This document shows positions 3,050-62,823 of a DNA stretch of 64,000 nucleotides, one piece after another. The notes under the pieces were generated by a model that saw nothing but the letters and a program-made list of their open reading frames with translations, was not told where the DNA came from and searched no databases. Origin of the DNA: Octopus sinensis (lineage: Eukaryota); contig NW_021824954.1 of assembly GCF_006345805.1 (NCBI RefSeq), positions 310,001 to 374,000 of the forward strand, read 5' to 3'. Both the position numbers and the translations under genes were made by a program. The number at the start of each line of letters is the position of its first letter. Position 1 is the stretch's first letter.

Positions 3050-3430
3050 GCTTGCTTACCAGCCGCATGGTTCCAGGTTCATTCCCACTGCGTGGCACCT
3101 TGTGTCTTCTACTATAGCCTTGGGCCGACCAAAGCCTTGTGAGTTGATTTGGTAGACGGAAACTGAAAGAAGTCCGTCGTATTTATGTATATGTATATGT
3201 GTGTATATGTTTGTGTGTCTGTGTTTGTCCCCCAACATTGCTTGACAACCCATGGTGGTGTGTTTACGTCCCCGTAACTTAGCGGTTCCGCAAACGAGAC
3301 CGATAGAATAAGTAATAGGCTTCCAAAGAATAAGTCCTAGGGTCGATTTGCTCGACTAAAGGCGGTGATCCAGTATGGCCGCAGTCAAATGACTGAAAAA
3401 GTAAAAGAGAAAAAGAGAAAGAGAAAGAGA
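3050..3430 (+). mobile_element. tRNA-derived SINE, family A (abundant octopus-type SINE with internal TA/TG tract)
   Basis: B-box-like GGTTCCAGGTTCATTCCC, body ACTATAGCC..GGCCGACCAAAGCCTTGTGAG, tail GGCGGTGATCCAGTATGGCCGCAGTCAAATGACTGAAA. At least six other copies in the window. Confidence 0.85.
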
Positions 3431-3462
3431 ATATACTTATATATATTTATACATATTTATGT

Positions 3463-3860
3463 ATTCTTTTATTCTGTTACTTGTTTCAGTTATTTGACTG
3501 CGGCCATGCTGGAGCACCATCTTTAGACGAGCAAATCGACCCCAGAACTTATTCTTTGTAAGCGTAGTACTTATTCTATCGGTATCTTTTGTCGAACCGC
3601 TAAGTTACGGGGACGTAAACCCACCACCATCGGTCGCCAAGTGATGTTGGGGAACAAACATAGACACACAAACATATACACACACATACACATACATATA
3701 TACGACAGGCTTCTTTCAGTGTCCGTCTACCAAATCCACTCACAAGGCTTCGGTCGACCCGAGGCTATAGTAGAAGACACTTGTCCAAGGTGCCACCAAG
3801 TGAGACTGAACCAGGAACCATGTGGTTGGTAAGCAAGCTACTTACCACAGAGCCACGCCA
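3463..3860 (-). mobile_element. SINE family A, near full length, inverted relative to 3050-3430
   Basis: Reverse complement of the same head, body and tail. Confidence 0.85.
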
Positions 3861-7654: not shown

Positions 7655-7850
7655 AAGCACAAGGCCCGAAATTTTTTTTTGGGGGGGCTAGTCGATTAGA
7701 TCGACCCAGTACGCAACTGGTACTTAATTTGAAAGGCAAAGTCGACCTTGGCGGAATTTGAACTCAGAACGTAAAGACAGACGAAATACCGTTAAACATT
7801 TCGCCCGGCGTGCTAATGTTTCTGCCAGCTCGCCGCCTTCCAGTGAGCAT
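7655..7850 (-). mobile_element. SINE family B (head AAGGCGGCGAGCTGGCAGAA..GTTCTGAGTTCAAATTCCGCC)
   Basis: Matches the copies at 9865, 13210, 17342 and 21888. Confidence 0.8.
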
Positions 7851-7909
7851 ACATATTGTATTAGTATATTATTCAAGCGATTAACATATTCCATTACTGG
7901 AGACTTGTG

Positions 7910-8180
7910 AGGAATTTTAGTCGAAGAAATCAACCTCATTCCAAATTATTTGTAAAACCTGATATTTATTGTATCGGTCTCCTTTGCCGAACTGCTAGGT
8001 TACAAGGATGTAAACACACCAACACCGGTTGTCAAGTGGTGGTGGGAGACAAAAACAGACTCAAAGACATCCCCCCGCCACACAAATATATATATGACGA
8101 GCTTCTTTTAGTTTCCGTATATGAAATCCACTTAAAAGGCTTTGGTCGGCCCGAGGCTATAGTAGAAGACACTTGCTTAA
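7910..8180 (-). mobile_element. SINE family A, partial
   Basis: GGCTTTGGTCGGCCCGAGGCTATAGTAGAAGACACTTG and the tail segment. Confidence 0.75.
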
Positions 8181-8659
8181 GGAGAGAAAATAGGCGAAAG
8201 ACTCTGTATCAATACATAACTCTTAGTATGGCTACTTGCATATATTGACAGCAATATCTTGTAAGATACAACTATGTTAAATATAGCTACTGCTGCTGCA
8301 CAACAATGGTATTTGCAGCAATATCAGCATCATCAACGGCAGCTGCAGTTGCTTTAATTCTTGTGGTAACAGTACCAGGCATTGCTGTTTGCAATAGCAA
8401 GTTGAATATTGAAAGATGATTGGACGAGAAGAAAATGAAGTGAAGTGAGAAGAAAAGGTATTAAGAGAATAGAGTATTAGTAGCCTGATCAGCAGCAGGA
8501 ATAGATGAATTTGGAATATGAAAAGGATTAAGAATGTAAAAATGGAGAGGAGTAAGAACGAATAGTTATAGGAGAAGACGATAATAATTACAACAACGAT
8601 GATGATGAAAATAATGATGATCTTAATTAAAACAGCACAACAACAACAACAATGATAAT

Positions 8660-8815
8660 AATCCTTTCTACTATAGGCACAAGGCCTGAAATTTTGAAGG
8701 AGGGAACTCGTCGATTACATATTTTATCAACTCAGAAAGGGATGAAAGGCCAAGTCAGCCTCGGTGGAATTTGAACTCGGAACGTAATGGCAGTCGAAAC
8801 GCCGCTAAGGATAAC
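8660..8815 (-). mobile_element. SINE family B, partial
   Basis: GGAATTTGAACTCGGAACGTAA and tail CCTTTCTACTATAGGCACAAGGCC. Confidence 0.7.
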
Positions 8816-8817
8816 GT

Positions 8818-8939
<122 letters not shown>

Positions 8940-8944
8940 TATGG

Positions 8945-9375
8945 TAATATTTATAGGATTGAGGTAACTCAATCATATGTGTGTATCTGTCTGAGTAACA
9001 ATATGCGTGTGTGAGATTGTGTTTCTCTGTTTCTGGATTTATGTGTGTGTAGGGGTGCATGTGCACGCGTGTGTGATGTATGCTATATGTGTCACAGTGT
9101 GCACGATTTATACGTGACTTATTTGTTCTAGTACATGTAAGTTTGTGTGTAAGTTTGTGTAAGTTTTTGAGTGTATATTTGTTGTACATGTATATATGTA
9201 TATGTAGATATGAATGTATGGTTTGTTTATTTATCAAGCAAACAAAAAAAAAAGAAGAGTGCCATTGTCATCAAGTGAACGATATTTCGATATCTCATGT
9301 GCCGAATGGCACTGTTCTTTTTTTTTTTTGGCTGCTATATCTTCTGGTGGAGTTACCTCAATCCTATAAATATTA
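8945..9375. repeat. 430-bp segment bounded by a perfect 26-bp inverted repeat (MITE-like)
   Basis: TAATATTTATAGGATTGAGGTAACTC (8945-8970) is the exact reverse complement of 9350-9375. Confidence 0.6.
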
Positions 9376-9482
9376 ACCAAAATGAAGTAGATTGACACGT
9401 TTATTTTTTGAACCTGTGGAAGACATACGAGATGTCGAAATATCGTTCACTTGATAACAACGGCACTCCTCTTTTTTTTTGC

Positions 9483-9615
<133 letters not shown>

Positions 9616-9864
9616 TGGATTTAGTTGTAACAACACAATCATCCAGCAACCTCAGCCATGTATATCTAGTATTTTCAGCTTCTTTCTCCACTTCATGAAT
9701 CACTGTTCCTCTGCCATTCATAAGTTCAACGACAGTAGGATCTAGTCACTAACTTACGATTATTCCTCATCAATTTTCATGTACCCGTTTTGGCCTCTCA
9801 ATGGATCGTTGATTTCTTTTTTATCAAGACAGACCTCACCATGAAGTTACGGCGTTAGTAGGTT

Positions 9865-10055
9865 AAAGGTGGCGAGCTGGCAGAGTCGTTAGCACACCGG
9901 GTGAAATGCTTAGCGGTAGTTCGTCTGCTGCTACGTTCTGAGTTCAAATTCCGCCGAGGTCGACTTTGCCTTTCATCCTTTCGGGGTCGATTAAATAAGT
10001 ACCAGTTACGCACTGGGGTGGATATAATCGACTTAATCCGTTTGTCTGTTCCGCT
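9865..10055 (+). mobile_element. SINE family B
   Basis: Head with B-box GAGTTCAAATTCC and body GGGGTCGATTAAATAAGTACCAG. Confidence 0.85.
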
Positions 10056-10713
10056 AAGGATGTAAATTAAACCATTCAAATTGCCTCCCATTCTCTTTGA
10101 GAGTTGCTGACAATTGCCGGAAGCTTTTGTTTTCTTTCTCCAACTAAGAGGGAAATTTGAAGCCATTGAGAAATTTATAAATATGATATTCAACCCTTCA
10201 GTTATTTATACGAATTCATGCTATTGTCTCATTTATTCTCCTTTGTTATTTTCCTTGGCACCAGTGCTTTTACACAGAACTTTTACTGCATACATACACT
10301 CACGCACATATATACAACCATCATAATTACATAAACACAAAGACAAATAAACGAACCATACATTCATTTCTACAAATACATATATACACACACAACAAAT
10401 AAACACTCACAAACTTACACGTACTAAGACAAATAAGTCACGTATAAATCGTGCACACTGTGACACATATAGCATACATCACACACGCGCGGACTTGCAC
10501 CCCCTTCACATACATAGATCCAGAAACAGAGAGACACAATCTCACACACGCATATTGTTACTCAGACAGATATACACATATGATCATACGTACATGTACA
10601 TATAACACAGGTAACTTTCACGCACATAGGGGCCTTAATCTACTATTTATCTTCCTTGTTGCTATGGATTAAGGAAGGATTTAATTTGATAAATAACTTC
10701 CACATCGTTATGG

Positions 10714-18647: not shown

Positions 18648-20090
18648 TAGTTTTATTTTTATAGCGTGCTTTCACTTCACTACCGAGCGCAGCTCTGTGT
18701 GCCTTGGGTATGTGCTGTCATTTGTTGTGATGCTCTGATGGTTATTGTATGGAAAGTGTTCTGCGTAGGATGTGTGCAGTGCCTAGTAGTGCAATTTTCT
18801 GTATGTTATGTGTGTTTGTAAGTCCTGGTGTTTTTGTTATGTATTTGTCTGAATATTTTTTTATCATGCCTAATGCACCTACTATGATAGGAATTGTTTC
18901 TGTTTTCAGATTCCACATTCTAGTTACCTCTATTTCCAGGTCTTTGTATTTTGAGAGTTTCTCCATTTCTTTTAGAGACACGTTGTCATCTGCCGGTATT
19001 GATACATCAATTAGAAAGCATTTTTTTTCTTCATGATCTCTGACAACTATATCTGGTCTGTTGGCCTTAATTTCTCTATCTGTGTGTATCGGCATATCCC
19101 AGAGTATGGTTGCTTTCTCGTTTTCTGTGACCTTTTCTGGTGTGTGCCTATACCATCTTTTTTCTGTTGTTATTCCATAATGTTGGCATAGCTTCCAATG
19201 TATGTAGGTTCCAACTCTGTCATGTCTGTGAATATATTCCTTCTTAGCCAGGACTGGGCAGCTAGAGATAATATGATTTATTGTTTCTTGTCCATCTCCA
19301 CATATTCTGCAGTTACTTGTAATATTTCTTTTCATTACATGTTTTTGGTAATTTCTGGTGGGGAGGCTCTGGTCTTGTGCTGCAATTAAAAATCCCTCTG
19401 TTTCTGCTTTGAGTCCTGAGCTTCTCAACCATTGCTGGGATTTTTCTTTGTCTATTTCTTTTGCGCTTAGTTTAGTGCAGTATTTACCATGAAGGGGCTT
19501 TTCTTGCCATCGTTTTATCATGGCTCGTTGCTGTTCTATTTTTAGTTTGGATTTCATTTGTTTTATAGCTTTTGTTGTTTTTTCATCTTCTTCTTCTTCT
19601 TCTTCTTCTTCTTTGTGTTTATTAGGTGGTATGATTTCTTGTTTGTATTTGTCAGCTTCCTTAAATACTGAGAACAGTTTTTTGTTTTGCTCGTGTTTTG
19701 CTGCTATCTGGATCAGTTTTCCTTCCTTCTGAAGTAGGTATTTTTGCAGTCCTATGGTGGTTATTTTATAGTAGTTTTCCAGCTGTATAAGGCCTCTACC
19801 ACCTTCTATACGTTGTATATATAGTCTTTCTATGTCAGATTTTGGGTGATGCATCCTAGATCCTGTCAGTATTTTTCTTGTTTTCCTATCTATTTTGGAC
19901 AGTTCATTTCATGTCCAGTTAAGGATATTGTAGCTGTAACTTATAACTGGGACAGCTAAAGTGTTGATACCTATTATCTTGTTTTTAGCATTGAGCTCTG
20001 TTTTTAGTATTGATCTAACTCGTCTATAATATTCTTTTTTTATTTTCTGTTTCATTTGTGTGTGTTGTGTCTTATCTAGTTCATTATTAT
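18645..20090 (-). mobile_element. 5'-truncated R4/Dong-like RLE retrotransposon, copy 1 (ORF 18742-19854)
   Basis: RLYIQRIEGGRGL; KPLHGKY; SSGLKAETEGFLIAAQDQSL; CRICGDGQETINHIISSC (CCHC); RPDIVVRD..LIDVSIP..KEMEKLSKYKDL (PD-(D/E)xK nuclease). Both ends abut (TAA)n. Confidence 0.95.
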
Positions 20091-20132: not shown

Positions 20133-21590
20133 TAGTTTTATTTTTATAGCGTGCTTTCACTTCACTACCGAGCGCAGCTCTGTGTGCCTTGGGTATGTGC
20201 TGTCATTTGTTGTGATGCTCTGATGGTTATTGTATGGAAAGTGTTCTGCGTAGGATGTGTGCAGTGCCTAGTAGTGCAATTTTCTGTATGTTATGTGTGT
20301 TTGTAAGTCCTGGTGTTTTTGTTATGTATTTGTCTGAATATTTTTTTATCATGCCTAATGCACCTACTATGATAGGAATTGTTTCTGTTTTCAGATTCCA
20401 CATTCTAGTTACCTCTATTTCCAGGTCTTTGTATTTTGAGAGTTTCTCCATTTCTTTTAGAGACACGTTGTCATCTGCCGGTATTGATACATCAATTAGA
20501 AAGCATTTTTTTTCTTCATGATCTCTGACAACTATATCTGGTCTGTTGGCCTTAATTTCTCTATCTGTGTGTATCGGCATATCCCAGAGTATGGTTGCTT
20601 TCTCGTTTTCTGTGACCTTTTCTGGTGTGTGCCTATACCATCTTTTTTCTGTTGTTATTCCATAATGTTGGCATAGCTTCCAATGTATGTAGGTTCCAAC
20701 TCTGTCATGTCTGTGAATATATTCCTTCTTAGCCAGGACTGGGCAGCTAGAGATAATATGATTTATTGTTTCTTGTCCATCTCCACATATTCTGCAGTTA
20801 CTTGTAATATTTCTTTTCATTACATGTTTTTGGTAATTTCTGGTGGGGAGGCTCTGGTCTTGTGCTGCAATTAAAAATCCCTCTGTTTCTGCTTTGAGTC
20901 CTGAGCTTCTCAACCATTGCTGGGATTTTTCTTTGTCTATTTCTTTTGCGCTTAGTTTAGTGCAGTATTTACCATGAAGGGGCTTTTCTTGCCATCGTTT
21001 TATCATGGCTCGTTGCTGTTCTATTTTTAGTTTGGATTTCATTTGTTTTATAGCTTTTGTTGTTTCTTCATCATCTTCTTCTTCTTCTTCTTCTTCTTCT
21101 TCTTCTTCTTTGTGTTTATTAGGTGGTATGATTTCTTGTTTGTATTTGTCAGCTTCCTTAAATACTGAGAACAGTTTTTTGTTTTGCTTGTGTTTTGCTG
21201 CTATCTGGATCAGTTTTCCTTCCTTCTGAAGTAGGTATTTTTGCAGTCCTATGGTGGTTATTTTATAGTAGTTTTCCAGCTGTATAAGGCCTCTACCACC
21301 TTCTATACGTTGTATATATAGTCTTTCTATGTCAGATTTTGGGTGATGCATCCTAGATCCTGTCAGTATTTTTCTTGTTTTCCTATCTATTTTGGACAGT
21401 TCATTTCATGTCCAGTTAAGGATATTGTAGCTGTAACTTATAACTGGGACAGCTAAAGTGTTGATACCTATTATCTTGTTTTTAGCATTGAGCTCTGTTT
21501 TTAGTATTGATCTAACTCGTCTATAATATTCTTTTTTTATTTTCTGTTTCATTTGTGTGTGTTGTGTCTTATCTAGTTCATTATTATTAT
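20130..21590 (-). mobile_element. 5'-truncated R4/Dong-like RLE retrotransposon, copy 2 (ORF 20227-21351), tandem duplicate
   Basis: Same protein as copy 1 apart from poly-E length and a few substitutions; same truncation point. Confidence 0.95.
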
Positions 21591-22771: not shown

Positions 22772-22877
22772 ATATATTATATATATATATATATGAGGAT
22801 AATATCGATATTTAAGTATCAATATTATCAAGTGGCCAGCATGGAAAAAATACCGTACAAAGGTAATAATTTTTAAC

Positions 22878-23442
22878 AATTAAAAATGAGGGTGTCTGAG
22901 AGACACCAACATGCCGAAATAGCAGTCGAAATTCTGCCTATAAAAACCACGTTAAGTGTTCATATCGTACCATGAGATAAGGCAGAGGGACAAAATATAC
23001 AAGCAAAAGTTATTGAATAATTCAAGATCCAGCATTTCTGGTTTTGCTTTAAATAAGCTTTACCGTCATCAATTGAATATATCTATTCACTGCGGTGTTT
23101 ATTTTAACCATATCGTGCTTTTGGCGGGCAATTTAACTGGCCGTGTGCATACGTACATATGTATGTATGTATGGACGTTCGTATATGTAAGTATATCGTT
23201 TGTTCTGCATATATATATCTGTATTTATGTACCCTTGATATATTCAATTGATGACGGTAAAGCTTATTTAAAGCAAAACCAGAAATCCTGGATCTTGAAT
23301 TATTCAATAACTTTTGCTTGTATATTTTGTCCCTCTGCCTTATCTCATGGTACGATATGAACACTTAACGTGGTTTTTATAGTCAGAATTTCGACTGCTA
23401 TTTCGGCATGTTGGTGTCTCTCAGACACCCTCATTTTTAATT
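22878..23442. repeat. 206-bp near-perfect inverted repeat with a 153-bp spacer
   Basis: 22878-23083 versus 23237-23442; two mismatches seen by eye. Confidence 0.9.
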
Positions 23443-23465
23443 ATATATATATATTATATATATAT

Positions 23466-27600: not shown

Positions 27601-29416
27601 ATTAAAATATTCAGGCAAAGAAAGATATAAGCAAACACGCACTTTATATATACAACTTGTAAGCGGAACAGTAAAATACACAAGACTTTACTGAAGTTCA
27701 ACATGTAACATGTATTAGTGTTGTTATTTAAATATCAAAGATGGAGCGTTGTTTCTCTGTTAGAAACCAGCTCCTTTGTGGAGAGAATTCAAATAACTAG
27801 AAAAAGTAAGGCATACGCACATATATATAGATGTATGTATGTACGTACATACATACATACATATACATACATACATACATACATGCATGCATGCATACAT
27901 ACACACAAATATCATGCAGGCTTGCTATATATACGAGCAATCTCTATACGTGTAAGGGTAGCAGAAACACACGTTGAAGAATCAGGAATTTCGTTGCAAG
28001 TCATCTTATCAAATTAAAGACGTCCAATAACTATTTCCATCTTGATACAGTTGCCTCTATGGAGATTTTCTCCCTTTGCAGCTGCTTGTTATAACAAAAC
28101 AAAAAAAGAGAGTTGGGGAGGATTGGTTATATTCTCGAGTGTTCACCAACAAAAAGCAAATTTGTAAATAAAAATAAACTCAAATATATGAATACTATTC
28201 CTTCTTTGTTTGATGACTAAAAACATCTCATACTAACACCATTGGACTCAATAATAAACAACTTCACACATAAATATTATATTCATGTGACATCTGATAG
28301 CATTGGGCCCGGACTAATTTGAATAGAATTTGAGCTGGATTAATTTGAATGGAATTTGATCAGGAATAATGCACCAAATAATTATAATGTATCAACTGGA
28401 AATTGAGAACAAACAAGCTATGAAACATCACTGAAAATAAACATAGCAAAAAAAAAAGACCAAACAAAAAACAAAAACGAAACAAAACCAAAAAACCGGC
28501 TTTGAACAATAAAATATATAAGTATATCTCGTAATTTTATTGTGAATATAGCTACAGCCGTAGTAGTTCCGAATATTTATGACCCAACGAGAGAGCTTTT
28601 AAATACACATTCGAACTCCTCATTTGATCGACTGCATTACTTGCTTGATACTTAGAATATCAATCTTAGCGGCACAAAAGGTTATGGCGATTTGGGCGTA
28701 GAATGATGCGACAAAATACTTTAAGCTGTTTTCTCTGATGCCCTACTGATTCTGTCAAAGTACCCTTGTTTTGATAGGTATAGTGAGGAAGAGTCGATTT
28801 AATACGTGATAGGATTACAGACCGTAGCAGAATTTGAGAAAATATAATGAGAATAAAGACTTTTATGATATCTGTCAGTCATCTGCACCTCTATGCGCAG
28901 ACCTGTCCAGGCCCTTTTATGTGGAAGACTAGAATGCGAATTTTTTCTCTCCCCACCACTGACTTTGTTCAAGGGCAAAACAGTCTTAATGCCGATACAG
29001 TTTGACGTCGTTGTCATGATAGGTGTGGCTGTCAGGATGCGAAGAGGTCGAGACAAGTACAACAAGATATTTCGTTCGATGTTCTAAGAGTTCCGCTCAT
29101 CCAGCCGCTGGATTGATAATTTCTTTTATCGACCCTCGACGGGACTTGAACTAAGTGAGTGCAGGGATCCAGAACAAGTCGACTTGCTAGAAATAGCAAC
29201 CAGTTCTCTTTAGCAACACAGTCCGCTAATAATATTGATACTATTACACACTCACACACGCACACAAACACTCATACACATACACACTCACGCATACATA
29301 TATATTTAAAAATCTTTAAATCATTATGATTTCTCGTTATAATTTTGAAATGTTCTTAATATTTTTGGGCTGCAATTGTCCAATGTTTCATTCTTCTTAT
29401 TTAATAAGTAAGCTTT

Positions 29417-30242
29417 TGTCTAATGCTGGTTTTAATTTAAAATGACTCTGAGGTTTTCATTTCCCTGCCTCTAAGGGAAAAAGAAGTATAAGAAAATCGA
29501 TCGAATATAATTCCTAAAGGTTTTAAATGAATATAGACGAATTAATTTCATGATCTCAAGTTATGTTGTACTGAGGAGCCCATAAGAAGGGCGAAATGGC
29601 GCCATCTACAAAAAGAATAAAATAAAAGGATCATATGGAAATATTATTTCTTATGCTCTCTCACCCAAGAAAACAACCTCTCATAATAATTATAATAAAA
29701 ATCATAAACCCTCTTCTCTTCAATGAAATCTTCACCTTCTCTACTATCTTTCAGTAAACTGTCTCTCCTTTCTTGCTCCGGAAGCAATTGTAGGTGGCAA
29801 CAGCAACAGTTCTCAGTCAAATTTCCGACGCATATATATATGTATCAGGAACGTACCACCTGGGTAGGCAAGGTAGTCAGTGCCTACCCTGAATAAAATA
29901 GATCGATAGTAATATTTTCCTTTTATGGCAAAATATGCACCTAATTCAATAAAATTATGGAGTAACCTTCATAATTTTATTGAATTAGGTGCATATTTGC
30001 CACCTACAATTGCTTCCGGAGCAAGAAAAGAGAGACAGTTTACTGAAAGATAGTAGAGAAGGTGAAGATTTCATTGAAGAGAAGAGTACAACATAACTTG
30101 AGATCATGAAATTAATTCGTCTATATTCGTTTAAAACCTTTAGGAATTATATTCGATCGATTTTCTTATACTTCTTTTTCCCTTACAGAGGCAGGGAAAT
30201 GAAAACCTCAGAGTCATTTTAAATTAAAACCAGCATTAGACA
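29417..30242. repeat. Large interrupted palindrome centred on loop GAGTAACCTT (29960-29969)
   Basis: Perfect 29-bp core stem 29931-29959/29970-29998. The right arm 29999-30242 is the reverse complement of 29711-29799 plus 29417-29572. Confidence 0.9.
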
Positions 30243-30780
30243 CATCAGTAATTGCTTAGGGTAAGCAGTTGGTGACGTTTATGTAATAAAACGCAAAAAA
30301 ATAAGCGAAACACAGGCGCATGACTGAGTTGGAGACAGAATTACTTCTGCCTTTATGGCGCATATGTTGTTGTAAGAATGTACGCAGCACCTGTACTACA
30401 GTCGTACTATACGTAATTTTAATACTGAAACTGAAAGGCAGGGACAAATTATGGCTACCTAATCTACAAAAATTAGGATATTTTGCATTTTATGCATAGT
30501 TATCAGAGTAACCTTTGATAACTATGCATAAAATGCAAAATATCCTAATTTTTGTAGATTAGGTAGCCATAATTTGTCCCTGCCTTTCAGTTTCAGTATT
30601 AAAATTACGTATAGTACGACTGTAGTACACGTGCTGCGTACATTCTTACAACAACGTATGCGCCATAAAGGCAGAAGTAATTCTGTCTCCAACTCAGTCA
30701 TGCGCCTGTGTTTCGCTTATTTTTTTGCGTTTTATTACATAAACGTCACCAACTGCTTACCCTAAGCAATTACTGATGTG
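30241..30780. repeat. 265-bp-arm near-perfect palindrome centred on loop GAGTAACCTT (30506-30515)
   Basis: 30241-30505 versus 30516-30780; two mismatches seen by eye. Confidence 0.95.
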
Positions 30781-31082
30781 CCTTATATATATACTCTGAG
30801 TTTCCCGGCAACGGGAAACTCAGAGTAACAGGTTTTGTTGAATTTTCTGTTGCTTTAAATAAAGTATATATATATATATACCGCACGCTAGGAGGGACTT
30901 TTGCAGTCAAAACTACTAAAATAAACAAATTATACCGAATGCAAAACTTTAAAGCGAGTCATTTAAAAACAGAATTTAGTTACATATCACCTGTGATTTC
31001 GCAATCAATGCAGAATATGCATTCTATGCTCTTCAGTGCAACGAACTCAAGACATGTAAGAAAAAACACAGCATATATATAT

Positions 31083-31139
<57 letters not shown>

Positions 31140-31369
31140 GATGTATGTATATAAATAAATATATATGTATACATACATGTGTGTGGCGTGAGCGTGAATG
31201 AATGCCTGTCAGTCTGTATGTATGTATGTACGTTCTGGACCAGTTCTATATGGTTCAAAGCGTACTTAAATTTTCCTGTCAATGACTTCATTTCAGATTC
31301 ATAAGAGTATCTTTCAAGGCGGTGGTTCCCATTATCTTCGCTGCTGTTACCGCAACAAATCAGATTTTT

Positions 31370-31505: not shown

Positions 31506-31673
31506 ATAATAGCAGAATGATTGGAAATGTTTTGCTCCGTGGATTTTGAAATATGTAAAATAATTTGGAATGTCCTTAATTGCATGGTTCAAGTATTCAT
31601 CTGAGAAAACAGTTTCTATATAATGATATAATGAACTCATATATATATACGTATATATACATACATATATATA

Positions 31674-31739
<66 letters not shown>

Positions 31740-31746
31740 CGTATAT

Positions 31747-31803
<57 letters not shown>

Positions 31804-31821
31804 AACATGCAGATATACATA

Positions 31822-32170
31822 TCTATATATATAAAACTGAGAATGTGAGTCTGTCTGTCTGTGTGCTTCCCTAAAACTTGAGAACTACACAACCAATTTC
31901 ATTCAAATTTTATACATGCCTTACTTTTTCCCTAGGGCGAGCCCACAGCAATATCATATCTTCTCCACGACGATTCCCTAAAACTTGAGAACTACACAAC
32001 CAATTTCATTCAAATTTTACACACGCCTTACTTAGGTTCCATGTAGTTTTATGGGAAAAAATGTTCAACTTCTTGCGCAGGGCGAGCCCATAGCAATAGC
32101 ATATCTTCTCCACTATTTCAGTATTACGTGTTAAAAGTGAAACAAAAACATTTCTCTATTTTTTGTCAGA
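31822..32170 (+). mobile_element. Non-autonomous Helitron/DINE-1-like element, 5' part with an internal ~110-bp duplication
   Basis: TCTATATATATAAAACTGAG start followed by (CTGT)n; same family as 49690-49920. Confidence 0.65.
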
Positions 32171-33290: not shown

Positions 33291-34162
33291 TACAATTCCA
33301 GTCTGTTATATATTTTTAGTATTGTTATCACAAGCGATATCAAGATATAACTTTGCATTTTGTATTTTATGTATAGATGTATATATATATATAGATGTAC
33401 ATGTAATATGTACACATATATACATACATATATACATGCACTAGCACTATGACCCGGCAACGACGGGTCATAATGCTATATATATACATGCAGAATGGAA
33501 AGAATAGTAAAGATAAATGAAGAGTACAAATATTTCATACCTAAAACAATGTTTGTTACATAACTTGTAACACTCATAAAAGCTGCTTACCTAGTCCTGA
33601 AGATTAGCTAAGCAGGCTTTATGAGTTACAAGTTATGCGCGCGTGCGTATGTGTGTGTGTGTGTGAGTGTGTGAGTGTGTGAGTGTGTGTATGTGTGTGT
33701 GTGTGTGTGTGTGTATGTGTGTATGTGTGCGTATCTTTGCGTGCATGTATACATTTGTCCCCGCTGTTTAGCTTCAGATAATGCTGATTCGGGAAGATTT
33801 GCGGTTCCGTGTTTTAATGCATCTAGACATTTATTGTCCAGTTTTCAAGAAGCTGCTATTCCTAGCACAGTGAACTAGCATGTAGAATATCCGTGTTACT
33901 CGTGGTGATGGTGATTGTCATATTAGCGGTAGTGGGACTGTAACCATGACGCAGTGTTGTTTGTAGCTGTTCCTGTTGTCGCCGTTGTATTAAATGGAAA
34001 ATAACGAGAAACCGAACAGATGTCGTTGACGCTCAATATATATTTTTCATGTCACGTTAATTCTACATCGATTAATTCGTAGCATAACTTGTAGTCTCAC
34101 AATAAGATATATGCAGACACAAGCACACATACACACACACACGCACACACACACACACACGC

Positions 34163-34200
<38 letters not shown>

Positions 34201-34247
34201 ACACACACACACGCACACACATACACACACACAACACACACACAAAC

Positions 34248-34288
<41 letters not shown>

Positions 34289-34382
34289 AACATACATTTA
34301 TATTCATATATATGAAATATGTATGCACATATGTGCATATATAAATACATATGTATCGTGTTTGTGTGTGTGTGTGTATGTA

Positions 34383-35917
34383 CAGCCTTGGCCAAACGTA
34401 TTATGCCACCCCAATGTTTTGGGATTCTGCTTTCTCAATGGTAATGAAACTCGTGCATATGGTAGATTATGATATATTTCATAATATACATTAGTTTTAA
34501 TATCTGGTTGACCCTCCTTTAGCATCAATTACTGCTTTTATACTGTACATATGCAACCATATGAGTAAGAGCAATGTCCAAAATTAATTTGTTTTCTTGA
34601 TTATATCAGAGTTTTATGCTAAAATACGTTGTAGATACAGTTAATAAGCAGTAAACTGCCTAAAACAAGGGAATTGAGTGAGTGTGAGCGAAGTGAAATC
34701 GTAGCTCATCATGAAGAGGGAATGTCTCAAAGGCAAATTGATGAAATGCTCTCGATGTGCGGTGCAAACGACTCTCAAGCGCTTCATTGAGACGAAAAAG
34801 ATCTGAAAACAATACAAAGAACAGGTAGAAAAAAAGGTTACATCACCTCGTGATGACAGATCCATCATCCGTCGGTCGCTCAGAAACAGGAGAAAAACAT
34901 TGTCGGAGCTCTGTGCGGACTTCAACAAGGCAAGTACTTCACAAATATCAACTAGAACTGTTAGAAGAAGGGATGTAGAGTACGGCCTGAAAGGCTGTAA
35001 AGCCAGGAAGAAGCCATGGGTTTCTAAAGCGAATATGGAAAAATGTCTTCAGTGGACCAAAAACCACTCAAATTGGACCAGTGAGCAATGGTCGAAAGTC
35101 ATAATGTCTGCTGAAAGTAACTATGAAGTAAGATAGTACATGTATTCAATCAACATATAAGCTTAAAGTAACTGGTTTGTTGCTCAAAATATATAAAAAA
35201 TTATCCAACATAATGTTAATATTATTTTTCATGTTTTTACTCAAGTTTTTGGCACAACTGGTGCAACTTTTGTGCATCACAGAGTTGGGGAAGAATTTAA
35301 AGTAGAATGTCTGGTACCAACAGTAAAACATGGGGGTGGTTCCATCATGGTGTGGGCCTGCATGTCTGCCACAGGACCTGGAGAAATGTTTTTTATGTCA
35401 GGAAAGGATGAATTCAGCTACAATTCTTTCTATGTTATCGGATGTTTTAGAGCCATCAAGTGCTAAATTGCATCCAGGAGTGTCGAAATACTGTTATTTT
35501 TCAACAGGACAACGCTCCATGTCATACAGCAAAGAATACTCGTCAATGGTTTGAGACATAGGGTATTGATCCCATGGACTGGCCAGCTCAAAGTCCAGTT
35601 CTTAATCCGATCGGACATCTATGGGGAACTCTTGGTGAAGCTATCAGAAACGCAACAATTAAAAATAAAGAGCATTTGTACTAAAAGTTGAGAGAAGAAT
35701 GGAGTAAAATTGTGCCTAGCACCTGCAAGAAACTAGTTTATTCAATGCCTAACCGTATAAAAGCGGTACTTAATGCTAATGGAGGGTCAACCAGATATTA
35801 AAACTAATGTATATTGTGAAATATACCATAGTCTACCATGTGCACGAGTTTCATTAACATTAAGATAGCAGAACTCCAAAACATTGGTGGGTAGCCTAAT
35901 ACTTTTTACCAAGGCTG
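34383..35917 (+). mobile_element. Full-length decayed Tc1 (DD34E-type) transposon with TIRs, TA TSD and an apparent intron
   Basis: TA|CAGCCTTGGCCAAACGTATT..AATACTTTTTACCAAGGCTG|TA. Peptides PKTRELSECERSEIV, RKKPW, VPTVKHGGGSIMVW, FQQDNAPCHTA, WPAQSPVLNPI, SMPNRIKAVLNANGGSTRY*; 34 residues between the second D and the E position. Confidence 0.92.
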
Positions 35918-40435: not shown

Positions 40436-41902
<1,467 letters not shown>

Positions 41903-45961: not shown

Positions 45962-47565
45962 CTAGCAGAGTTACCCGGCGTTGCCCGTGTTACATACAAT
46001 TGAAGAATTAGACTTTTCTGTTATATTTTCTGTAATGAACTGGAATACCTATGTTTCGAATTTCATCAAAATTGCAGATGCAGGTTATTTCCCTCTTTAC
46101 ACACCCTAAAACATTGTAATCGTGCCACATGTATCCCATATTACTGATTGTTATGCACATATTCCAAAATTCCAGTCTTATAGAACCTGTTAAAAGGATT
46201 TTGTTCCTGAAAAATGGAGGTCATGGAGCTCTAAAATGTGAGAGTTAACGCCTCTATTGGGGGTGGGCATCTTAATGTCAACCAGAGAAGTTGAATTGTT
46301 GAGAATCTTTTTAACTTGGGTCTTATATCTATTGTTTGAATTTCTTTGAAATAGGAAATATATGTTCACTGGGTTTGTAAAAGAGAGCAAAGCTACAGGA
46401 AACCAAAAGACGAATGATCACAATAAGCAGTCAGCTGCTACAGTACCCTAGTCGTTACCACTCCTAATGTAGTATTCCACACCATGCAGGTGACAGGAAC
46501 AGCCGATAGATACATTACGAATTGGAAGAGCGTGACCCAACTGAAATAAACACTAACAACTGTGTGACGTGAGTGCTAAGTAGAAATGAAAGTTGGAGTT
46601 TGCAAATGACCACTATATTGATACGTAACTGGATATAATAAATTTACAATCTATAAATGTCTTTGAATAACCAGTCACTCATCTGGGAAGGCCTTGAAAT
46701 TAATGTTACCATCTGGGGACCCAGTGATAATAAAAAGACTGAAAGGAGGTCTGCAACCAAATAACTTTACTCAACACTTTGCAACTGAATCAGTGGAAGC
46801 AAAGATGCCTCTCATTTACTTGACAATTTATGCAGCACATTGCAAAAATCACAATCTAAGTGTATGTCAAAGCAAACTCTTACACTGTTGTACCATTGAA
46901 TTACAAATAATGCTCATCTTCTATGCTCGGGTGACCCTACAGCTTCTAAGAGTACAACTGCATTCGTCTTTGCTTAGATAAAATGACAAAATTGTGGGTG
47001 TTAAGTCCCCATGAAGGGGTCTTTCTAACTTGTAAGAAGATGAAATTTTATAAATATTACTTCATTTGTATCTAATATCTATGGTTAAAATTTCATCAAC
47101 AGCAAAAGTATATGAATTGTCATGGGGGTTATGGCCCTTATACATAGAATATAATTTCCAAATTTCGTAAAGATCCATTCAGTACTTTTGACTTAGTTTT
47201 GGATCATAAAAGAAATGACTAAAATTTGGGAGTTAAGGCCCCCATTAGGATGTCTTAGAATCCTCATGTGAAATGGAAACTTTGTGGATACTTCTTTCAT
47301 CAACATCTAAAATTTATGAATTTTCATGGGGGTTCTGCCCCCTTTAAGCCATCTGAAATTCAAACCAACCATATTGCATTATACACGCCCTTATGCATTG
47401 AATCTAAGTTTCAAATATGATAAGGATCCATTCAGTAATTTTGGTCCATGAGATTGTATGAAACACACAGCATTACCCTTCTCCTTAGGCTTGGATTTTG
47501 TGTTCCAAATTTCATTATGATCGGTGCAGCAGTTTTCGAATGTATAAGTAATACACCAACACAAA
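45962..47565 (-). mobile_element. Non-autonomous Helitron-like element
   Basis: Minus-strand 3' end CGGGCAACGCCGGGTAACTCTGCTAG (hairpin plus CTAG at 45962-45965). Internal AAATTTCAT/CCCCAT-type subrepeats are shared with other Helitron-like copies. The right boundary is uncertain. Confidence 0.55.
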
Positions 47566-47812
47566 TTTTATCTAAGCAAAGACGAATATAGTTGTACTCT
47601 TAGAAGCTGTAGGGTCACCCGAGCATAGAAGATGAGCATTATTTGTAATTCAATGGAACAACAGTGTAAGAGTTTGCTTTGACATACACGTAGATTGTGA
47701 TTTCTGCAATGTGCTGCATAAATTGTCAAGTAAATGAGAGGCATCTTGCTTCCACTGATTCAGTTGCAAAGTTATTTGATTGCAGACCTCCTTTCAGTGT
47801 TTTTATTATCAC
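46724..47812. repeat. About 250-bp inverted repeat with a 580-bp spacer
   Basis: 46724-46984 versus 47565-47812; high identity with one ~12-bp indel. Confidence 0.9.
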
Positions 47813-50420: not shown

Positions 50421-50593
50421 TAGAGCAGTTAAAAACGTATCTTCCATGCGTGTTGAATGATCAATGTTTAAATAAAACATCGACAATTCTCCTTGATGCA
50501 AAATAAATGTAGAAGGCGACCTTTTAAATAAATAATATTTATCTCTCACCAGATGGAGAACTTTTTGTTGAATTTTCTATCACGGATCAGGAC

Positions 50594-55973: not shown

Positions 55974-57883
55974 ATGGCAGAATCTGCTACTAAAACTGCT
56001 ATCCCTACTAAAGATATCGCCACCAATAACATCACCATCACCGTCACCAAAGACCGTGCTGTCAATGCTACTAATACTACCAACACCACCGCCGTCACCA
56101 AGAACGACAATAACAACAACAAACGACGACGACAACAACAATTCCCTTCAACCACTGCTCACTCACTCCATCACCAACAAGTGAAAAAATAACGACGACA
56201 AGCAAACGAAATGTCGAATTTTGCCCTAGTGCAGGACTAAAGTACGCAGGCAATTTCCACCCCTTCCTACTTGCACGATCGAACCAACACACCAATTTTA
56301 CAAACTGCAGCCAACAACAACATCACCACAAGCAACAACAATAACAAAACAACAACAAATTTCGCTGAGGCGATTAAAGAAAAAAAAAACAACAATATAC
56401 TTTACGGCTCAACAATTACAGGACACGAACATCAAAATAACAGAATCAGAAGGTATCGTAAAAATTAACATACCAGAAGATATTTTGGAAAATGAAAAAA
56501 GACGAACAATCATTTATAAAATAGTTAACAAAAAAACAAAAATCCCAGAGAAGGCCAACACAGGCAAAATAGAGAAGTGCTTGAAACCCATCTGGGATCA
56601 CAAAGAATATGTAACCTGGTGGAACAAATTTGCCCACATACAAGTCGTTTTCTACACCGAAGAGTTAGCTAGACATTTCTCAACGCTAACTCTTCACTCA
56701 GATGAACTCCAACTTACACCAAGCTATCGGGGACAGAAAGTGACTAAGATCACTCTAAACAATGTCCCCAAAATAGCCAATAGTCTATGGCTTGTAAAGG
56801 CTTATGCGTAAAAATGGCGAATTATACTATTTTGGAAACCACAGTCACAGAGCATAAAAACTGGGTGGGAAAGAAAATAGAATTTCTTCTACATATACAT
56901 CATGAAGATATAAAAAAAATACCCACCCAGATATGTGTATCAGACGACCACAAGTTATATGTGGTCGTCGATGGCAGAAGACCACGTTGTTACATATGCG
57001 GCAGTGAGCAACATCTCAAAAAAGACTGCAAATCTGCCGCAAGAAAACAACAGCAACAACAACAGCAGCCGGAAACAAAAACAAATAAACAAGGTTTACT
57101 ACCCACACCACTTTTTGCAGGAACAACCTCACCAAACAAACAACCACACCAACTGCAGCACCAAGAACAGAAGCAGCATCACCAACAACAACAACCAAGA
57201 ATATACCAACTCCCAAACCAAGGACATCTGCCAAAAAGACACCCAGCATAAATGAAGAAACAATTACAACTCCAAATCCCCACAAAATTGAGACCCTAAA
57301 CAACACAACAATACCCACAATCACTCAAACAAACACAAATACCCAAACCCCACATCCAAAACCGCATACACCACAACCAAACGCTCACCAACCAACACCA
57401 CAACAAAACCAACACAGTCGACAATAGACCCCAATACTTTCCCTCTTCCAGACTCCGATTCGTCTGATCTGTCATTAGACGAAGAAGACACGGAAGTTTG
57501 GCAAATAGCCACAGGGGGGAGAAGAAAAAGGGGAAAAAAAAGAAAAGAAAAATAACAAACAAAGCGGGAAGATACACCACTCCCGAAACAAAAACATCCA
57601 CAGAAAACACCACATCAACACAAACACACCATCATCAAACCCCCCAAAAATGTTGACAGCCATAAACACAAACAACCACGACCTAATGGAACACATTAGG
57701 TCAAACACTAACATTACTGAAAACGACATAAAAACAAGTAACCACCCACACACAACACCACCACAACACATTAAAATAATACACGTGACACAGAACACAT
57801 ACAGCACCCTGAAATCTCTTTACCCTGATGCAGTAGGGAGATTTCAAAAGTACTCATCAAAAAACTGTACAAAAGCCTCATAG
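55974..57883 (+). pseudogene. LINE ORF1 (RRM-like region plus gag-like zinc knuckle), broken by stops and frameshifts
   Basis: RPRCYICGSEQHLKKDC is CX2CX4HX4C; low-complexity T/N/Q-rich flanks. Confidence 0.75.
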
Positions 57884-57972
57884 AAGAAGACCGTGAGGTG
57901 AAAGACAAAGAACTTTCGAAAGACAAGTAACCTTTTCTCTCTCCTTTTCCTTTTTTGCACTTTTATCGGAAC

Positions 57973-60900: not shown

Positions 60901-61399
60901 CCCTGGCCTGGCAGTGCTATCGAGAAGCATTACCTGTTCGGGATAAGCTCTACAGACACGGTTCCAGACACACTGGACCGACTTGCCCGAGATGCGGTCA
61001 GAGCGACGAAACCGTCTGCACGCACTCGTGCAATGTCCAACCATTTCCGACCTGTGGGCTTATGCCGAACGGCTGCTGTCACGTGTGGGACGAATCCGCC
61101 TATCGGCCGAGTCTATCGTGAGAATTGCTCCGCCCCCTTCCCTCAACCGGGAAGGCAGGCAGTTTCAATCGTACTGGTGGCCATGGTGAAAGAATGTGTG
61201 TGGTGGACTCGAGCGAAAGGATTAGAGACAAACACTTACCTCTCTGGCCAATCGCTCATCAACTTTTTCAAGTACCACTTGAAAAGGAAGGTGAGAATGG
61301 AGAGGGAAGTTTGTCTCGCGAAAGATTCAAAAAAAGATGGGTGAATGTTGCAAAGATGGTGCGTCTAGTAACGAAACCATTTTGAGCATGATCCTGTAG
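57973..61399 (+). pseudogene. LINE ORF2 (AP endonuclease, reverse transcriptase, CCHC), multiple frameshifts
   Basis: MLRIGSINVRGL; AISETR; VYAPS; VGDWNA; SYLDRV; YTDHK; KSPGLDGLPYEFY; FRPITLLNAD; DQSKAFDRVDH; VRQGCPLS; AYADDV; CPRCGQSDE. Confidence 0.93.
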
Positions 61400-61735
61400 A
61401 TCGTAAAAAAGAAAAAAAGAGAGCATTTTTGACCTCATGTGTTTATTTCCTCCCTGACTGGGGTTCCCGTGGTCTTTTCTGTAGGCTTTTCTTCCCACGG
61501 ATGAACCCAATCTTGTTATATCAATGTTTACACCATTATTTCTGTGATACACGATTTTCTTTTTTTTCCTTTTTTTTTTTTCCTCCTCTCGATCCCTTTT
61601 GATCGCAATCTTACATTTTTTTTTTTTTATTTTTTTCCACCCTCGAAAAGAAAAGCTCTGCATTTGTATTTGTCCCCTCTGTATTCAGCCCTGTGTGGCT
61701 AATAAAAGAAAGTTATCTTTACACAATTGCATACA

Positions 61736-61759
<24 letters not shown>

Positions 61760-61766
<7 letters not shown>

Positions 61767-61987
61767 CTTTTATATTTTACTTATTTCAGAAATTTGACTG
61801 CGGTTATGCTGGAGCACCGCCTTTAGTCGAGCAAATTGACCTCAGTACTTATTCTTTGGAAGCCTAGTACTTATTCTATCGGGCTCTTTTGCCGAACCGC
61901 TAAGTTATGGGGGACGTAAACACACACCATCGGTTGTCAAGCAATGTTGGTGGTGACAAACACAGACACACATATACACACACATAC

Positions 61988-62018
<31 letters not shown>

Positions 62019-62190
62019 CATATATACGACGGGCTTCTTTCAGTTTCCATCCACCAAATCCACTCACAAGGCTTTGGTCGGCACGAGGCTATAGTAGAAG
62101 ACACTTGCCCAAGGTGCGACGTAGTGGGACTGAACCCGGAACCATGTGGTTGGTAAGCAAGTTACTTACCACACAGCCACTCCTGCGCCT
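61760..62190 (-). mobile_element. SINE family A, full length
   Basis: Head GGCGCAGGAGTGGCTGTGTGGTAAG on the minus strand; tail GGCGGTGCTCCAGCATAACCGCAGTCAAA. Confidence 0.88.
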
Positions 62191-62236
62191 AGCTACTTAT
62201 ATACGTATATCTCAGCGCCTCCCACACGCAAACATA

Positions 62237-62751: not shown

Positions 62752-62823
<72 letters not shown>

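What the first reader, a model, noticed from the sequence alone, without database searches (positions are those of the whole stretch)
29417..30780. Two abutting giant palindromes with the identical 10-nt tip GAGTAACCTT
Seen: palindrome 1 (centre 29960-29969) and palindrome 2 (centre 30506-30515; 265-bp arms, two mismatches) have unrelated outer arms, meet with a 2-bp overlap at 30241-30242, and share exactly the same unpaired loop. Both also carry a similar motif near the tip (AATTTTATTGAATTAGGTGCATATTTGCC versus AATTTTTGTAGATTAGGTAGCCATAATTTGTCC). This is the reverse of MITE logic, where ends are conserved and the centre varies. Inference: a sequence-specific hairpin or fold-back reaction, like the concatemer junctions of hairpin-ended replicons or rolling-hairpin products of an HUH/Helitron-type enzyme. 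It could be an undescribed palindromic element family. A library or assembly fold-back artefact cannot be excluded from sequence alone.
Basis: partly seen in the sequence, partly recalled or inferred. Interest (0 to 1): 0.78.

Follow-up and report, generated by a model that had tools for sequence, protein, structure and literature searches.

The report
Double fold-back palindrome sharing one loop
Two back-to-back DNA palindromes in an animal genome share the same 10-base centre, most likely because one break at that 10-mer was repaired by each broken end copying its own flank backwards; it looks like a rare repair scar, not a new mobile element.

Summary
The core observation is real. P1 (29417-30242) and P2 (30241-30780) abut with a shared CA. 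Their arms are unrelated, and both are centred on GAGTAACCTT in the same orientation (chance about 2e-6). Two corrections apply. The "similar near-tip motif" is no better than chance. P1 is lopsided: its outer arm has two blocks (about 140 and 132 nt) that the inner arm lacks.

The window is animal nuclear DNA rich in LINEs and microsatellites. No HUH/Rep, helicase, recombinase or telomere-resolvase gene lies in the 64 kb. The arms have no other copy in the window and no protein relatives. The 10-mer sits at no other palindrome centre, and there is no target-site duplication.

Both palindromes have two substitutions per ~270 bp, half of them CpG transitions. So they are equally old and carry real germline mutations, which argues against a read fold-back artefact.

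Best reading (about 0.45): one event on an ancestral "outer-left arm, 10-mer, outer-right arm". A staggered break left the 10-mer on both 3' tails. Each tail folded back and copied its own flank, and the ends joined at CA. This explains the identical loop without any sequence-specific enzyme. A hairpin-ended replicon, a palindromic element family or an artefact cannot be excluded from one window.

The parts
29406..29415 (+). Degenerate copy of the 10-mer (8 of 10 bases, same strand), 1 nt outside P1's left end. Its relation to the event is unexplained.
   Evidence: There are 25 other + strand sites with 2 or fewer mismatches in 64 kb, so P is about 0.01 after allowing for boundaries and strands.
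29417..29959 (.). P1 outer (left) arm, called A', 543 nt. It holds two left-only blocks, about 29571-29710 and 29799-29930. In the model it is the ancestral template.
29960..29969 (+). Centre of P1: GAGTAACCTT.
29970..30242 (.). P1 inner (right) arm, called A, 273 nt. It is the reverse complement of A' minus the two blocks, with 269 matches, 2 substitutions and a 2-nt extra at 30186-30187. In the model it is the new copy.
30241..30242 (.). CA shared by the end of P1 and the start of P2. In the model it is the 2-bp microhomology of the final join.
30241..30505 (.). P2 inner (left) arm, called B, 265 nt. In the model it is the new copy.
30506..30515 (+). Centre of P2: GAGTAACCTT, in the same orientation as in P1.
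30516..30780 (.). P2 outer (right) arm, called B', 265 nt, with 263 matches and 2 substitutions against B. In the model it is the ancestral template.
30792..30827 (.). H3, a perfect 16-bp stem with loop GCAA, starting 11 nt beyond P2's outer end. Apart from P1 and P2 it is the only non-simple perfect hairpin of 14 bp or more in the window. It may be the barrier where right-hand copying stopped, or a third small snap-back.
   Evidence: (flank z about -6.6 and -8.3).

Best explanation
This is a one-off scar of a single complex rearrangement, not an element. Inferred ancestral locus: outer-left arm (29417-29959), one copy of GAGTAACCTT, outer-right arm (30516-30780). The duplex broke at the 10-mer with a stagger. 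Alternatively a fork collapsed there and replication switched templates. Either way, both ends kept the 10-mer on the strand that ends 3': the top strand on the left end and the bottom strand on the right end. Each 3' tail folded back with the 10-mer as the loop and was extended on its own strand. On the left it copied the flank but skipped two template blocks, giving 273 nt. On the right it copied 265 nt and stopped 11 nt short of the strong hairpin H3. The two new 3' ends then paired through CA/TG and were filled in and ligated. The result is A'-L-A joined to B-L-B'. The loop is identical and in the same orientation because it is one sequence read from the two strands. There is no target-site duplication, and both palindromes are the same age. 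The staggered break could come from two close nicks, for example from a LINE endonuclease, whose target duplications are about this size. Shown here: the architecture, the identity of the centres, equal divergence, uniqueness in the window, and the absence of linked enzymes. Inferred: the ancestral order, the break, the fold-back copying, and the polymerase and nuclease involved.
For: (1) The architecture is exactly A'-L-A-B-L-B' with a 2-bp overlap at the A/B joint. (2) The same-strand orientation of both centres follows from a single 10-mer kept on the two 3' tails. Hairpins formed from target-site duplicates by transesterification, or from recombinase-type 5' overhangs, would instead give palindromic or mutually inverted centres (reasoning from strand polarity). 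(3) Divergence is equal: 2 substitutions in 271 and in 265 paired bases, as one event predicts. (4) Two of the 4 substitutions are CpG transitions, while CpG columns make up 5.6% of the arms (P = 0.017). That points to real in-vivo decay after a real event. (5) Both large indels and the 2-nt insertion fall in the inner arm of P1, the arm the model calls the copy, and each block border has 2-nt microhomology. That fits non-processive copying. (6) No target-site duplication is present, the arms have no other copy in 64 kb, and arm ORFs have no protein relatives. (7) No HUH, helicase, recombinase or resolvase domain occurs in the window. (8) None of the 25 near-copies of the 10-mer is flanked by complementary sequence. 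(9) P2's copy ends 11 nt before H3, the most structured DNA in the flanks. (10) The process is known: snap-back synthesis at resected ends followed by a microhomology join (PMC5728401, PMC2943611, PMC4912351), and fold-back priming that makes palindromes with a non-palindromic centre (PMC7999016, and the introduction of PMC3734650).
Against: Described snap-back tracts are usually tens of bases, not about 270, and I found no description of both ends of one break doing it symmetrically. The 10-mer has essentially no self-structure (dG about 0). Priming from its 3' end would rest on only 2-3 pairs, with a terminal mismatch on the right end. The near-equal copy lengths (273 and 265 nt) are not predicted. 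The 8/10 copy of the 10-mer 1 nt outside P1 (P about 0.01), the CCTT right after P2, and the TCAGAGTAAC shared between the P2 tip and the H3 flank (P about 0.04) are unexplained. They could point to sequence-specific nicking. The skipped blocks are not unusually structured (z about -1). No outgroup or second haplotype was available, so the ancestral order is untested.
Confidence: 0.45

Rival explanations
1. An integrated unit-length copy of a small hairpin-ended ('dumbbell') DNA, or of its inverted-dimer or rolling-hairpin replication form. The duplex would be A-B (about 540 bp), closed at both ends by the same 10-nt loop, unfolded once and opened opposite the A/B joint.
For: A'-L-A-B-L-B' is formally one turn around such a molecule. 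The loops are identical and in the same orientation, as for two-fold symmetric hairpin telomeres. There is no target-site duplication. A 10-mer-like motif lies at the left insertion border.
Against: Any two abutting palindromes can be written this way, so the fit is not a test. Only 10 nt are shared between the two ends, so there are no terminal repeats. There is no coding capacity, and no Rep, HUH, resolvase or polymerase gene lies in the 64 kb. There is no second copy or relative, and neither centre is in the metagenome collection. The 272 nt of extra sequence in one strand of arm A would have to be added later.
Confidence: 0.12
2. An assembly or library artefact: chimeric fold-back molecules or reads, joined through a short synthetic or recurrent sequence and incorporated into the contig.
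For: Fold-back chimeras are a known failure of long-read and amplification-based libraries. An identical short centre could be a linker remnant. I had no reads to check.
Against: The structure is internal, with unique flanks on both sides, not at a contig end. The arms differ by CpG-type substitutions (P = 0.017) and by 140-nt and 132-nt indels, which is not what two strands of one molecule give. The stems next to the 10-mer differ, so no adapter stem is present. The 10-mer appears in the literature only inside ordinary primers, in either orientation.
Confidence: 0.1
3. Snap-back cDNAs: two small RNAs of about 280 nt that begin with the same 10 nt were reverse-transcribed by LINE machinery. 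Each first strand folded back at the RNA 5' end to prime its second strand, and the two hairpin cDNAs were inserted in tandem.
For: Read on the top strand, L+A (283 nt) and L+B' (275 nt) are similar in size and start with the same 10 bases. The window is LINE-rich. Reverse transcriptases do carry out snap-back synthesis (10.1101/2022.03.14.484287, abstract).
Against: There is no poly(A) or microsatellite tail at the outer ends and no target-site duplication. The shared leader stops at exactly 10 nt. Rfam has no match above threshold. The two left-only blocks are unexplained.
Confidence: 0.05
4. Two members of a palindromic transposon, MITE or hairpin-RNA gene family that happen to sit side by side. 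The centre would be conserved by descent or function, and the arms kept alike by conversion within each copy.
For: Whole-length palindromic MITEs and MITE-derived hairpin RNAs exist. Permissive Rfam hits are all to such hairpin models. The window holds several other long inverted repeats.
Against: The arms are completely unrelated between P1 and P2. There is no target-site duplication, the termini are not conserved, and there are no other copies. The other inverted repeats have unrelated, longer centres. The Rfam hits are far below threshold, go to many unrelated families and occur on both strands.
Confidence: 0.05

Closest known systems
Synthesis-dependent microhomology-mediated end joining (SD-MMEJ) and polymerase-theta snap-back templated insertions (PMC5728401, PMC2943611, PMC4912351)
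   Same: A resected 3' tail folds back on its own strand and copies the adjacent flank in reverse complement. It then unwinds and joins the other end by a short microhomology. Synthesis is non-processive, with template skips, and no target-site duplication results.
   Different: Described tracts are mostly tens of bases, while these are about 270 nt on both ends of one break. The priming pairs inside the 10-mer are minimal. Symmetric double snap-back sharing one overhang as both loops is not something I found described.
Palindrome formation by fold-back priming at a short inverted repeat next to a break (Tetrahymena rDNA, yeast and CHO models; PMC7999016, introduction of PMC3734650)
   Same: The palindrome has a non-palindromic spacer at its centre. 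One arm is the original flank and the other a copy primed by intrastrand annealing.
   Different: Those products run to the chromosome or amplicon end and need a pre-existing short inverted repeat. Here the arms are short, both sides of the break are involved, and a pre-existing inverted repeat is not shown. The resemblance of 28507-28542 to the P1 tip is only borderline.
Inverted duplications from staggered breaks at inversion breakpoints in Drosophila (PMC7584159 among search hits; mechanism cited from general knowledge)
   Same: A staggered break leaves the same short stretch on both ends, and it ends up duplicated in the product.
   Different: There the segment between two breaks is inverted and the duplicates lie far apart. 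Here nothing is inverted as a whole, and each flank is duplicated back on itself.
   Same: Two palindromes share the same unpaired tip, and the unit-length unfolded form reads A'-L-A-B-L-B'.
   Different: There are no terminal repeats beyond 10 nt, no genes, no replication protein nearby, and no other copy. One arm is 272 nt longer than its partner.
DIRS1-type retroelements, which have an internal complementary region matching both termini (general knowledge)
   Same: The internal segment A-B is the reverse complement of the right end joined to the left end, which is the DIRS1 bridging logic.
   Different: There are no inverted terminal repeats and no RT or tyrosine-recombinase genes. The two 10-mers are direct rather than inverted, and complementarity covers the whole structure rather than short terminal extensions.
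Whole-length palindromic MITEs and MITE-derived miRNA hairpins
   Same: A near-perfect hairpin several hundred bases long with a tiny loop. Sub-threshold Rfam hits go to such models.
   Different: There is no target-site duplication, no conserved termini and no family. It is the centre that is shared, not the ends.

Membership tests
Snap-back / fold-back break-repair scar (SD-MMEJ type) | New sequence is the reverse complement of the immediately adjacent flank | tested here: met
   Both palindromes: 269/271 and 263/265 paired bases match.
Snap-back / fold-back break-repair scar (SD-MMEJ type) | Microhomology at the final join and no target-site duplication | tested here: met
   CA is shared at 30241-30242, and the outer flanks show no direct repeat.
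Snap-back / fold-back break-repair scar (SD-MMEJ type) | Short inverted primer repeat at the fold-back point | tested here: inconclusive
   Only G.T, A-T and G-C pairs are possible inside the 10-mer. Predicted dG is about 0, although the full fold uses them to leave a 4-nt loop.
Snap-back / fold-back break-repair scar (SD-MMEJ type) | Short tract of templated synthesis (tens of bases) | tested here: not met
   The copies are 273 and 265 nt. It works like this process but lies outside its usual size range.
Snap-back / fold-back break-repair scar (SD-MMEJ type) | An unrearranged ancestral allele exists (outer arm, 10-mer, outer arm) | not testable with these tools
   No eukaryotic genome collection is available. 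The window's contig is not indexed, and metagenome scans found nothing.
Hairpin-ended replicon / rolling-hairpin product | Terminal repeats: the same sequence at both hairpin ends, beyond the loop | tested here: not met
   Only the 10-mer is shared. Near-tip similarity is at chance (107 of 500 shuffles).
Hairpin-ended replicon / rolling-hairpin product | A linked replication or resolution protein (HUH/Rep, resolvase, polymerase) | tested here: not met
   A Pfam pass over 123 ORFs of 70 aa or more found only LINE and Tc1-type domains. This covers 64 kb only.
Hairpin-ended replicon / rolling-hairpin product | Extrachromosomal hairpin-ended molecules exist | not testable with these tools
   This needs sequencing of the relevant DNA fraction.
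Helitron | Rep/helicase gene, or 5' TC and 3' CTRR ends with a 3' hairpin, inserted between A and T | tested here: not met
   No such domain. The borders read ...CTTT|TGTC and ...GTG|CCTT. H3 is not followed by CTRR on either strand.
MITE / foldback transposon family | Target-site duplication, conserved termini and multiple copies | tested here: not met
   No duplication. P1 and P2 termini are unrelated. No other copy in the window. The rest of the genome could not be searched.
DIRS1-like retroelement | Inverted terminal repeats plus RT and tyrosine-recombinase genes; internal region complementary to both termini | tested here: not met
   Only the complementarity is present. There are no inverted terminal repeats and no recombinase, and the RT ORFs in the window belong to LINEs elsewhere.
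Known hairpin RNA (miRNA or other Rfam family) | Score at or above the family's gathering threshold | tested here: not met
   No hits at gathering thresholds. The best permissive hit scores 65.7 bits against a threshold of 140, and hits go to many unrelated hairpin models on both strands.
Assembly fold-back artefact | Arms identical apart from random read error; adapter at the centre; often at a contig end | tested here: inconclusive
   Against: CpG-biased differences (P = 0.017), 140- and 132-nt indels, an internal position, and no adapter use of the 10-mer in the literature. Reads were not available.

The most novel reading that the evidence does not exclude
The 10-mer is the recognition or nick site of a sequence-specific hairpin-forming system in an animal genome. 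Either a small hairpin-ended DNA has both telomere loops equal to this 10-mer and integrated next to a look-alike site (29406-29415), or a nuclease cuts at RAGTAASCTT-like sites and caps the ends as hairpins. The genome would then hold a family of palindromes with unrelated arms and this one centre.
Probability: 0.08. Interest if true: 0.85.

Novelty: new variant of a known kind. Interest (0 to 1): 0.38.

Why it matters
If the leading reading is right, this locus is a germline-fixed record of one break. The identical loops give the length and polarity of the stagger (10 nt, kept on the 3'-ending strands). The arms show that fold-back copying in vivo can run about 270 nt on both ends of the same break, roughly ten times the tracts seen in reporter assays. 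That would link small snap-back insertions to the large fold-back inversions seen in amplified or unstable genomes. It would also show how long perfect hairpins, which are raw material for hairpin RNAs and fragile sites, can arise in one step from unique sequence. If instead the 10-mer marks a site-specific hairpin system, that would be a new kind of element in animals. One window cannot decide between these.

Tried and rejected
- Introns: I asked whether the two left-only blocks are introns, with the inner arm as a spliced copy. No GT-AG or CT-AC borders fit at any allowed slide. Rejected.
- Insertions: the blocks match each other, arm B and the rest of the window only through low-complexity sequence. 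Rejected as small elements.
- Structure: the blocks are not strongly structured (z about -1). No support for hairpin skipping.
- Near-tip motif shared by P1 and P2: at chance.
- Cryptic ~550-nt tandem unit, suggested by 10-mer spacings of 554 and 546 nt and by the blocks summing to about the length of B: the units are not homologous (U1 vs U3 z = 0.8), and the core GTAAS occurs about every 560 nt anyway. Rejected.
- Older decayed palindromes around the locus: none.
- A repeat crossing an outer boundary, which would show the outer arms are native: none found, so uninformative.
- The 16-mer shared by 30834-30849 and 50563-50578: no hairpin beside the second copy. Dropped.
- Hairpins formed on target-site duplicates by transposase-type transesterification, or from recombinase-type 5' overhangs: strand bookkeeping gives palindromic or mutually inverted centres, not two direct 10-mers. 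Rejected as stated.
- Independent copies of the locus: window ORFs are not indexed, arm ORFs have no relatives, and both centres are absent from the metagenome collection.
- Organism name: cluster look-up gave no names. A cephalopod is my guess, from recalled repeat motifs only, and is not evidence.
- Adapter or linker use of the 10-mer: none in the full-text search.
I did not use the large representative-protein search, because no claim depends on it.

Full report
**What is there.** The window is animal nuclear DNA. It is about 35% G+C and full of CA/TA microsatellites. It carries non-LTR retrotransposon ORFs whose best relatives come from sea stars, corals, shrimp and other marine animals. 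Rfam and tRNA scans find nothing.

At the reported coordinates there are two abutting palindromes. P1 runs 29417-30242 with GAGTAACCTT at 29960-29969. P2 runs 30241-30780 with the same 10-mer at 30506-30515, on the same strand. They share CA at 30241-30242. The exact 10-mer occurs nowhere else in the 64 kb. Two random 10-mers of this composition are identical with probability about 1.9e-6. The arms of P1 and P2 are unrelated to each other and have no other copy in the window. As a single strand, the locus folds into two long hairpins plus a third small one.

**Corrections to the observation.** The near-tip motif said to be shared by P1 and P2 is not above chance: 107 of 500 shuffles reach its score. 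P1 is also asymmetric. Its outer (left) arm is 543 nt and its inner (right) arm 273 nt, because two blocks (about 29571-29710 and 29799-29930) exist only on the left, and the right arm has 2 extra bases at 30186-30187. The blocks are not introns, since no canonical borders fit at any permitted slide. They are not recognisable elements either, and they are not unusually structured.

**Age and reality.** Outside the blocks, P1 has 269 matches and 2 substitutions, and P2 has 263 matches and 2 substitutions. So the two palindromes are equally diverged, at about 0.75%. Two of the four substitutions are CpG-to-TpG changes, although CpG columns make up only 5.6% of the arms (P = 0.017). That is the signature of germline decay in a methylated genome, not of read error. 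The structure also sits inside the contig between unique flanks. A fold-back read artefact is therefore unlikely, though only reads can exclude it. The 10-mer turns up in the literature only inside ordinary primers.

**Is it an element or a system?**
- A Pfam pass over all 123 non-redundant ORFs of 70 aa or more finds only zf-RVT, RVT_1, an AP-type endonuclease, a zinc knuckle and a Tc1/Tc3 transposase HTH. There is no HUH/Rep, helicase, tyrosine or serine recombinase, or telomere resolvase.
- There is no target-site duplication around P1, around P2 or around both together, and there are no Helitron-type ends.
- None of the 25 near-copies of the 10-mer on the + strand has complementary flanks.
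- The other long inverted repeats in the window have longer, unrelated centres.
- ORFs of both arms have no relatives among 5.8 billion protein clusters.
- Neither centre with its stem occurs in the metagenome collection.
- A permissive Rfam scan gives only sub-threshold hits to many unrelated miRNA hairpin models on both strands, which any perfect hairpin would give.

Within reach of these tools, nothing supports a family, a replicon or a linked enzyme.

**Mechanism.** Write the locus as A'-L-A-B-L-B', where A' and B' are the outer arms, A and B the inner arms, and L the 10-mer. The simplest history starts from a unique sequence A'-L-B' with one L.

- Suppose the duplex opens at L with a stagger, so that L stays on the 3'-ending strand of both ends: the top strand on the left and the bottom strand on the right. 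Each 3' tail then folds back and is extended on its own strand.
- The left end becomes A'-L-A. The right end, read on the top strand, becomes B-L-B'. The loops are identical and point the same way because they are the two strands of one 10-mer.
- The new 3' ends (...CA and ...TG) pair through 2 bases and are sealed. This gives the observed overlap, no target-site duplication and equal age.
- A replicative version, with three template switches at a collapsed fork, gives the same product and cannot be told apart here.

By the same strand bookkeeping, hairpins made by transposase-type transesterification on target-site duplicates, or from recombinase-type 5' overhangs, would give palindromic or mutually inverted centres. 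Those routes do not fit as stated.

Three details fit non-processive copying: both large gaps and the 2-nt insertion lie in the arm the model calls the copy; each block border has a 2-nt microhomology; and the right-hand copy ends 11 nt before H3. H3 is a perfect 16-bp hairpin at 30792-30827. It is the only non-simple perfect hairpin of 14 bp or more in the window besides P1 and P2, and the most structured DNA in the flanks.

The process itself is known as snap-back synthesis in SD-MMEJ and polymerase-theta repair (PMC5728401, PMC2943611, PMC4912351), and as fold-back priming in palindrome formation (PMC7999016; introduction of PMC3734650). A LINE endonuclease is a plausible but untested source of a 10-nt staggered break in this LINE-rich region.

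**What does not fit.**
- Described snap-back tracts are tens of bases, not about 270.
- The 10-mer has almost no self-pairing.
- The near-equal copy lengths are unexplained.
- Several borderline coincidences remain. An 8/10 copy of the 10-mer lies 1 nt outside P1 (P about 0.01). CCTT directly follows P2. TCAGAGTAAC is shared by the P2 tip and the H3 flank (P about 0.04). A 36-nt mini-hairpin at 28507-28542 resembles the P1 tip (26/36; 1 of 100 shuffles).

Together these leave some room for sequence-specific nicking or a short hairpin motif family. A suspected ~550-nt periodicity was tested and rejected.

**Comparison and verdict.** It works like a snap-back or fold-back repair scar, but at about ten times the usual length and on both ends of one break. 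I did not find that form described, so I class it as a new variant of a known kind. It fails the membership tests I could run for MITE/foldback transposons, Helitrons, DIRS1-like elements, hairpin-ended replicons and known hairpin RNAs.

My confidence is about 0.45 for the one-event fold-back model and 0.12 for an integrated hairpin-ended or rolling-hairpin unit. It is 0.10 for an artefact and 0.05 each for snap-back cDNAs and a palindromic element or hairpin-RNA family; the rest is unassigned. The decisive evidence is descriptive: the orthologous or allelic locus, spanning reads, and a genome-wide census of palindromes centred on this 10-mer.

I did not scan the viral contig collection with the centres.

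Noticed in passing
window 30792-30827: H3 is a perfect 16-bp hairpin with loop GCAA, 11 nt right of P2. Apart from P1 and P2 it is the only non-simple perfect hairpin of 14 bp or more in the 64 kb. The bases that close and follow it (TCAGAGTAAC, 30820-30829) repeat the P2 tip context at 30503-30512.
   Followed up: partly
window 29406-29415: AAGTAAGCTT matches the palindrome centre at 8 of 10 bases, on the same strand, 1 nt outside P1's left end. Corrected P is about 0.01, and it is unexplained.
   Followed up: partly
window 28507-28542: A 36-nt mini-hairpin with 9-10-bp AT-rich stems matches the P1 tip region in 26 of 36 positions with the same spacing. Only 1 of 100 dinucleotide shuffles of the window reaches this score.
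   Followed up: partly
window 18742-19854 and 20227-21351 (- strand): Two near-identical ORFs of 370 and 374 aa lie about 1.5 kb apart. Both carry the zf-RVT domain and look like the 3' part of a non-LTR retrotransposon ORF2 duplicated in tandem. The best relatives are 54-55% identical proteins of marine invertebrates, plus 78-90% identical fragments from unnamed runs.
   Followed up: partly
window about 56787-62911 (+ strand): A G+C-rich (about 50%) non-LTR retrotransposon is split over several reading frames. It has a zinc knuckle ORF, an AP-type endonuclease ORF and two RVT_1 pieces, so it is degraded. Breaks were not counted in detail.
   Followed up: partly
window 40733-41476 (+ strand): A third zf-RVT ORF of 247 aa, from another LINE fragment.
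   Followed up: no
window, position not determined: One ORF of 70 aa or more matches the Tc1/Tc3 transposase HTH domain (HTH_Tnp_Tc3_2, E = 4.5e-10), so a Tc1/mariner remnant is present somewhere in the window.
   Followed up: no
window 3102-3780, 22864-23456, 46802-47747, 34411-35887, 7730-9975, 9052-10503: These are other long inverted repeats, with arms of 99-297 nt at 87-97% identity and spacers of 85-2026 nt. Their centres are unrelated to the 10-mer. They are probably inverted pairs of dispersed repeats or terminal-inverted-repeat elements.
   Followed up: partly
window 30834-30849 and 50563-50578: The same 16-mer is followed within about 30 nt by a (TA)n tract at both places. The second site has no hairpin beside it.
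   Followed up: yes
window 31073-31175, 31639-31833, 33650-33729, 34124-34313: Long TA, AC and TG/CA microsatellites crowd the region right of the palindromes. They generate many spurious inverted-repeat calls.
   Followed up: no
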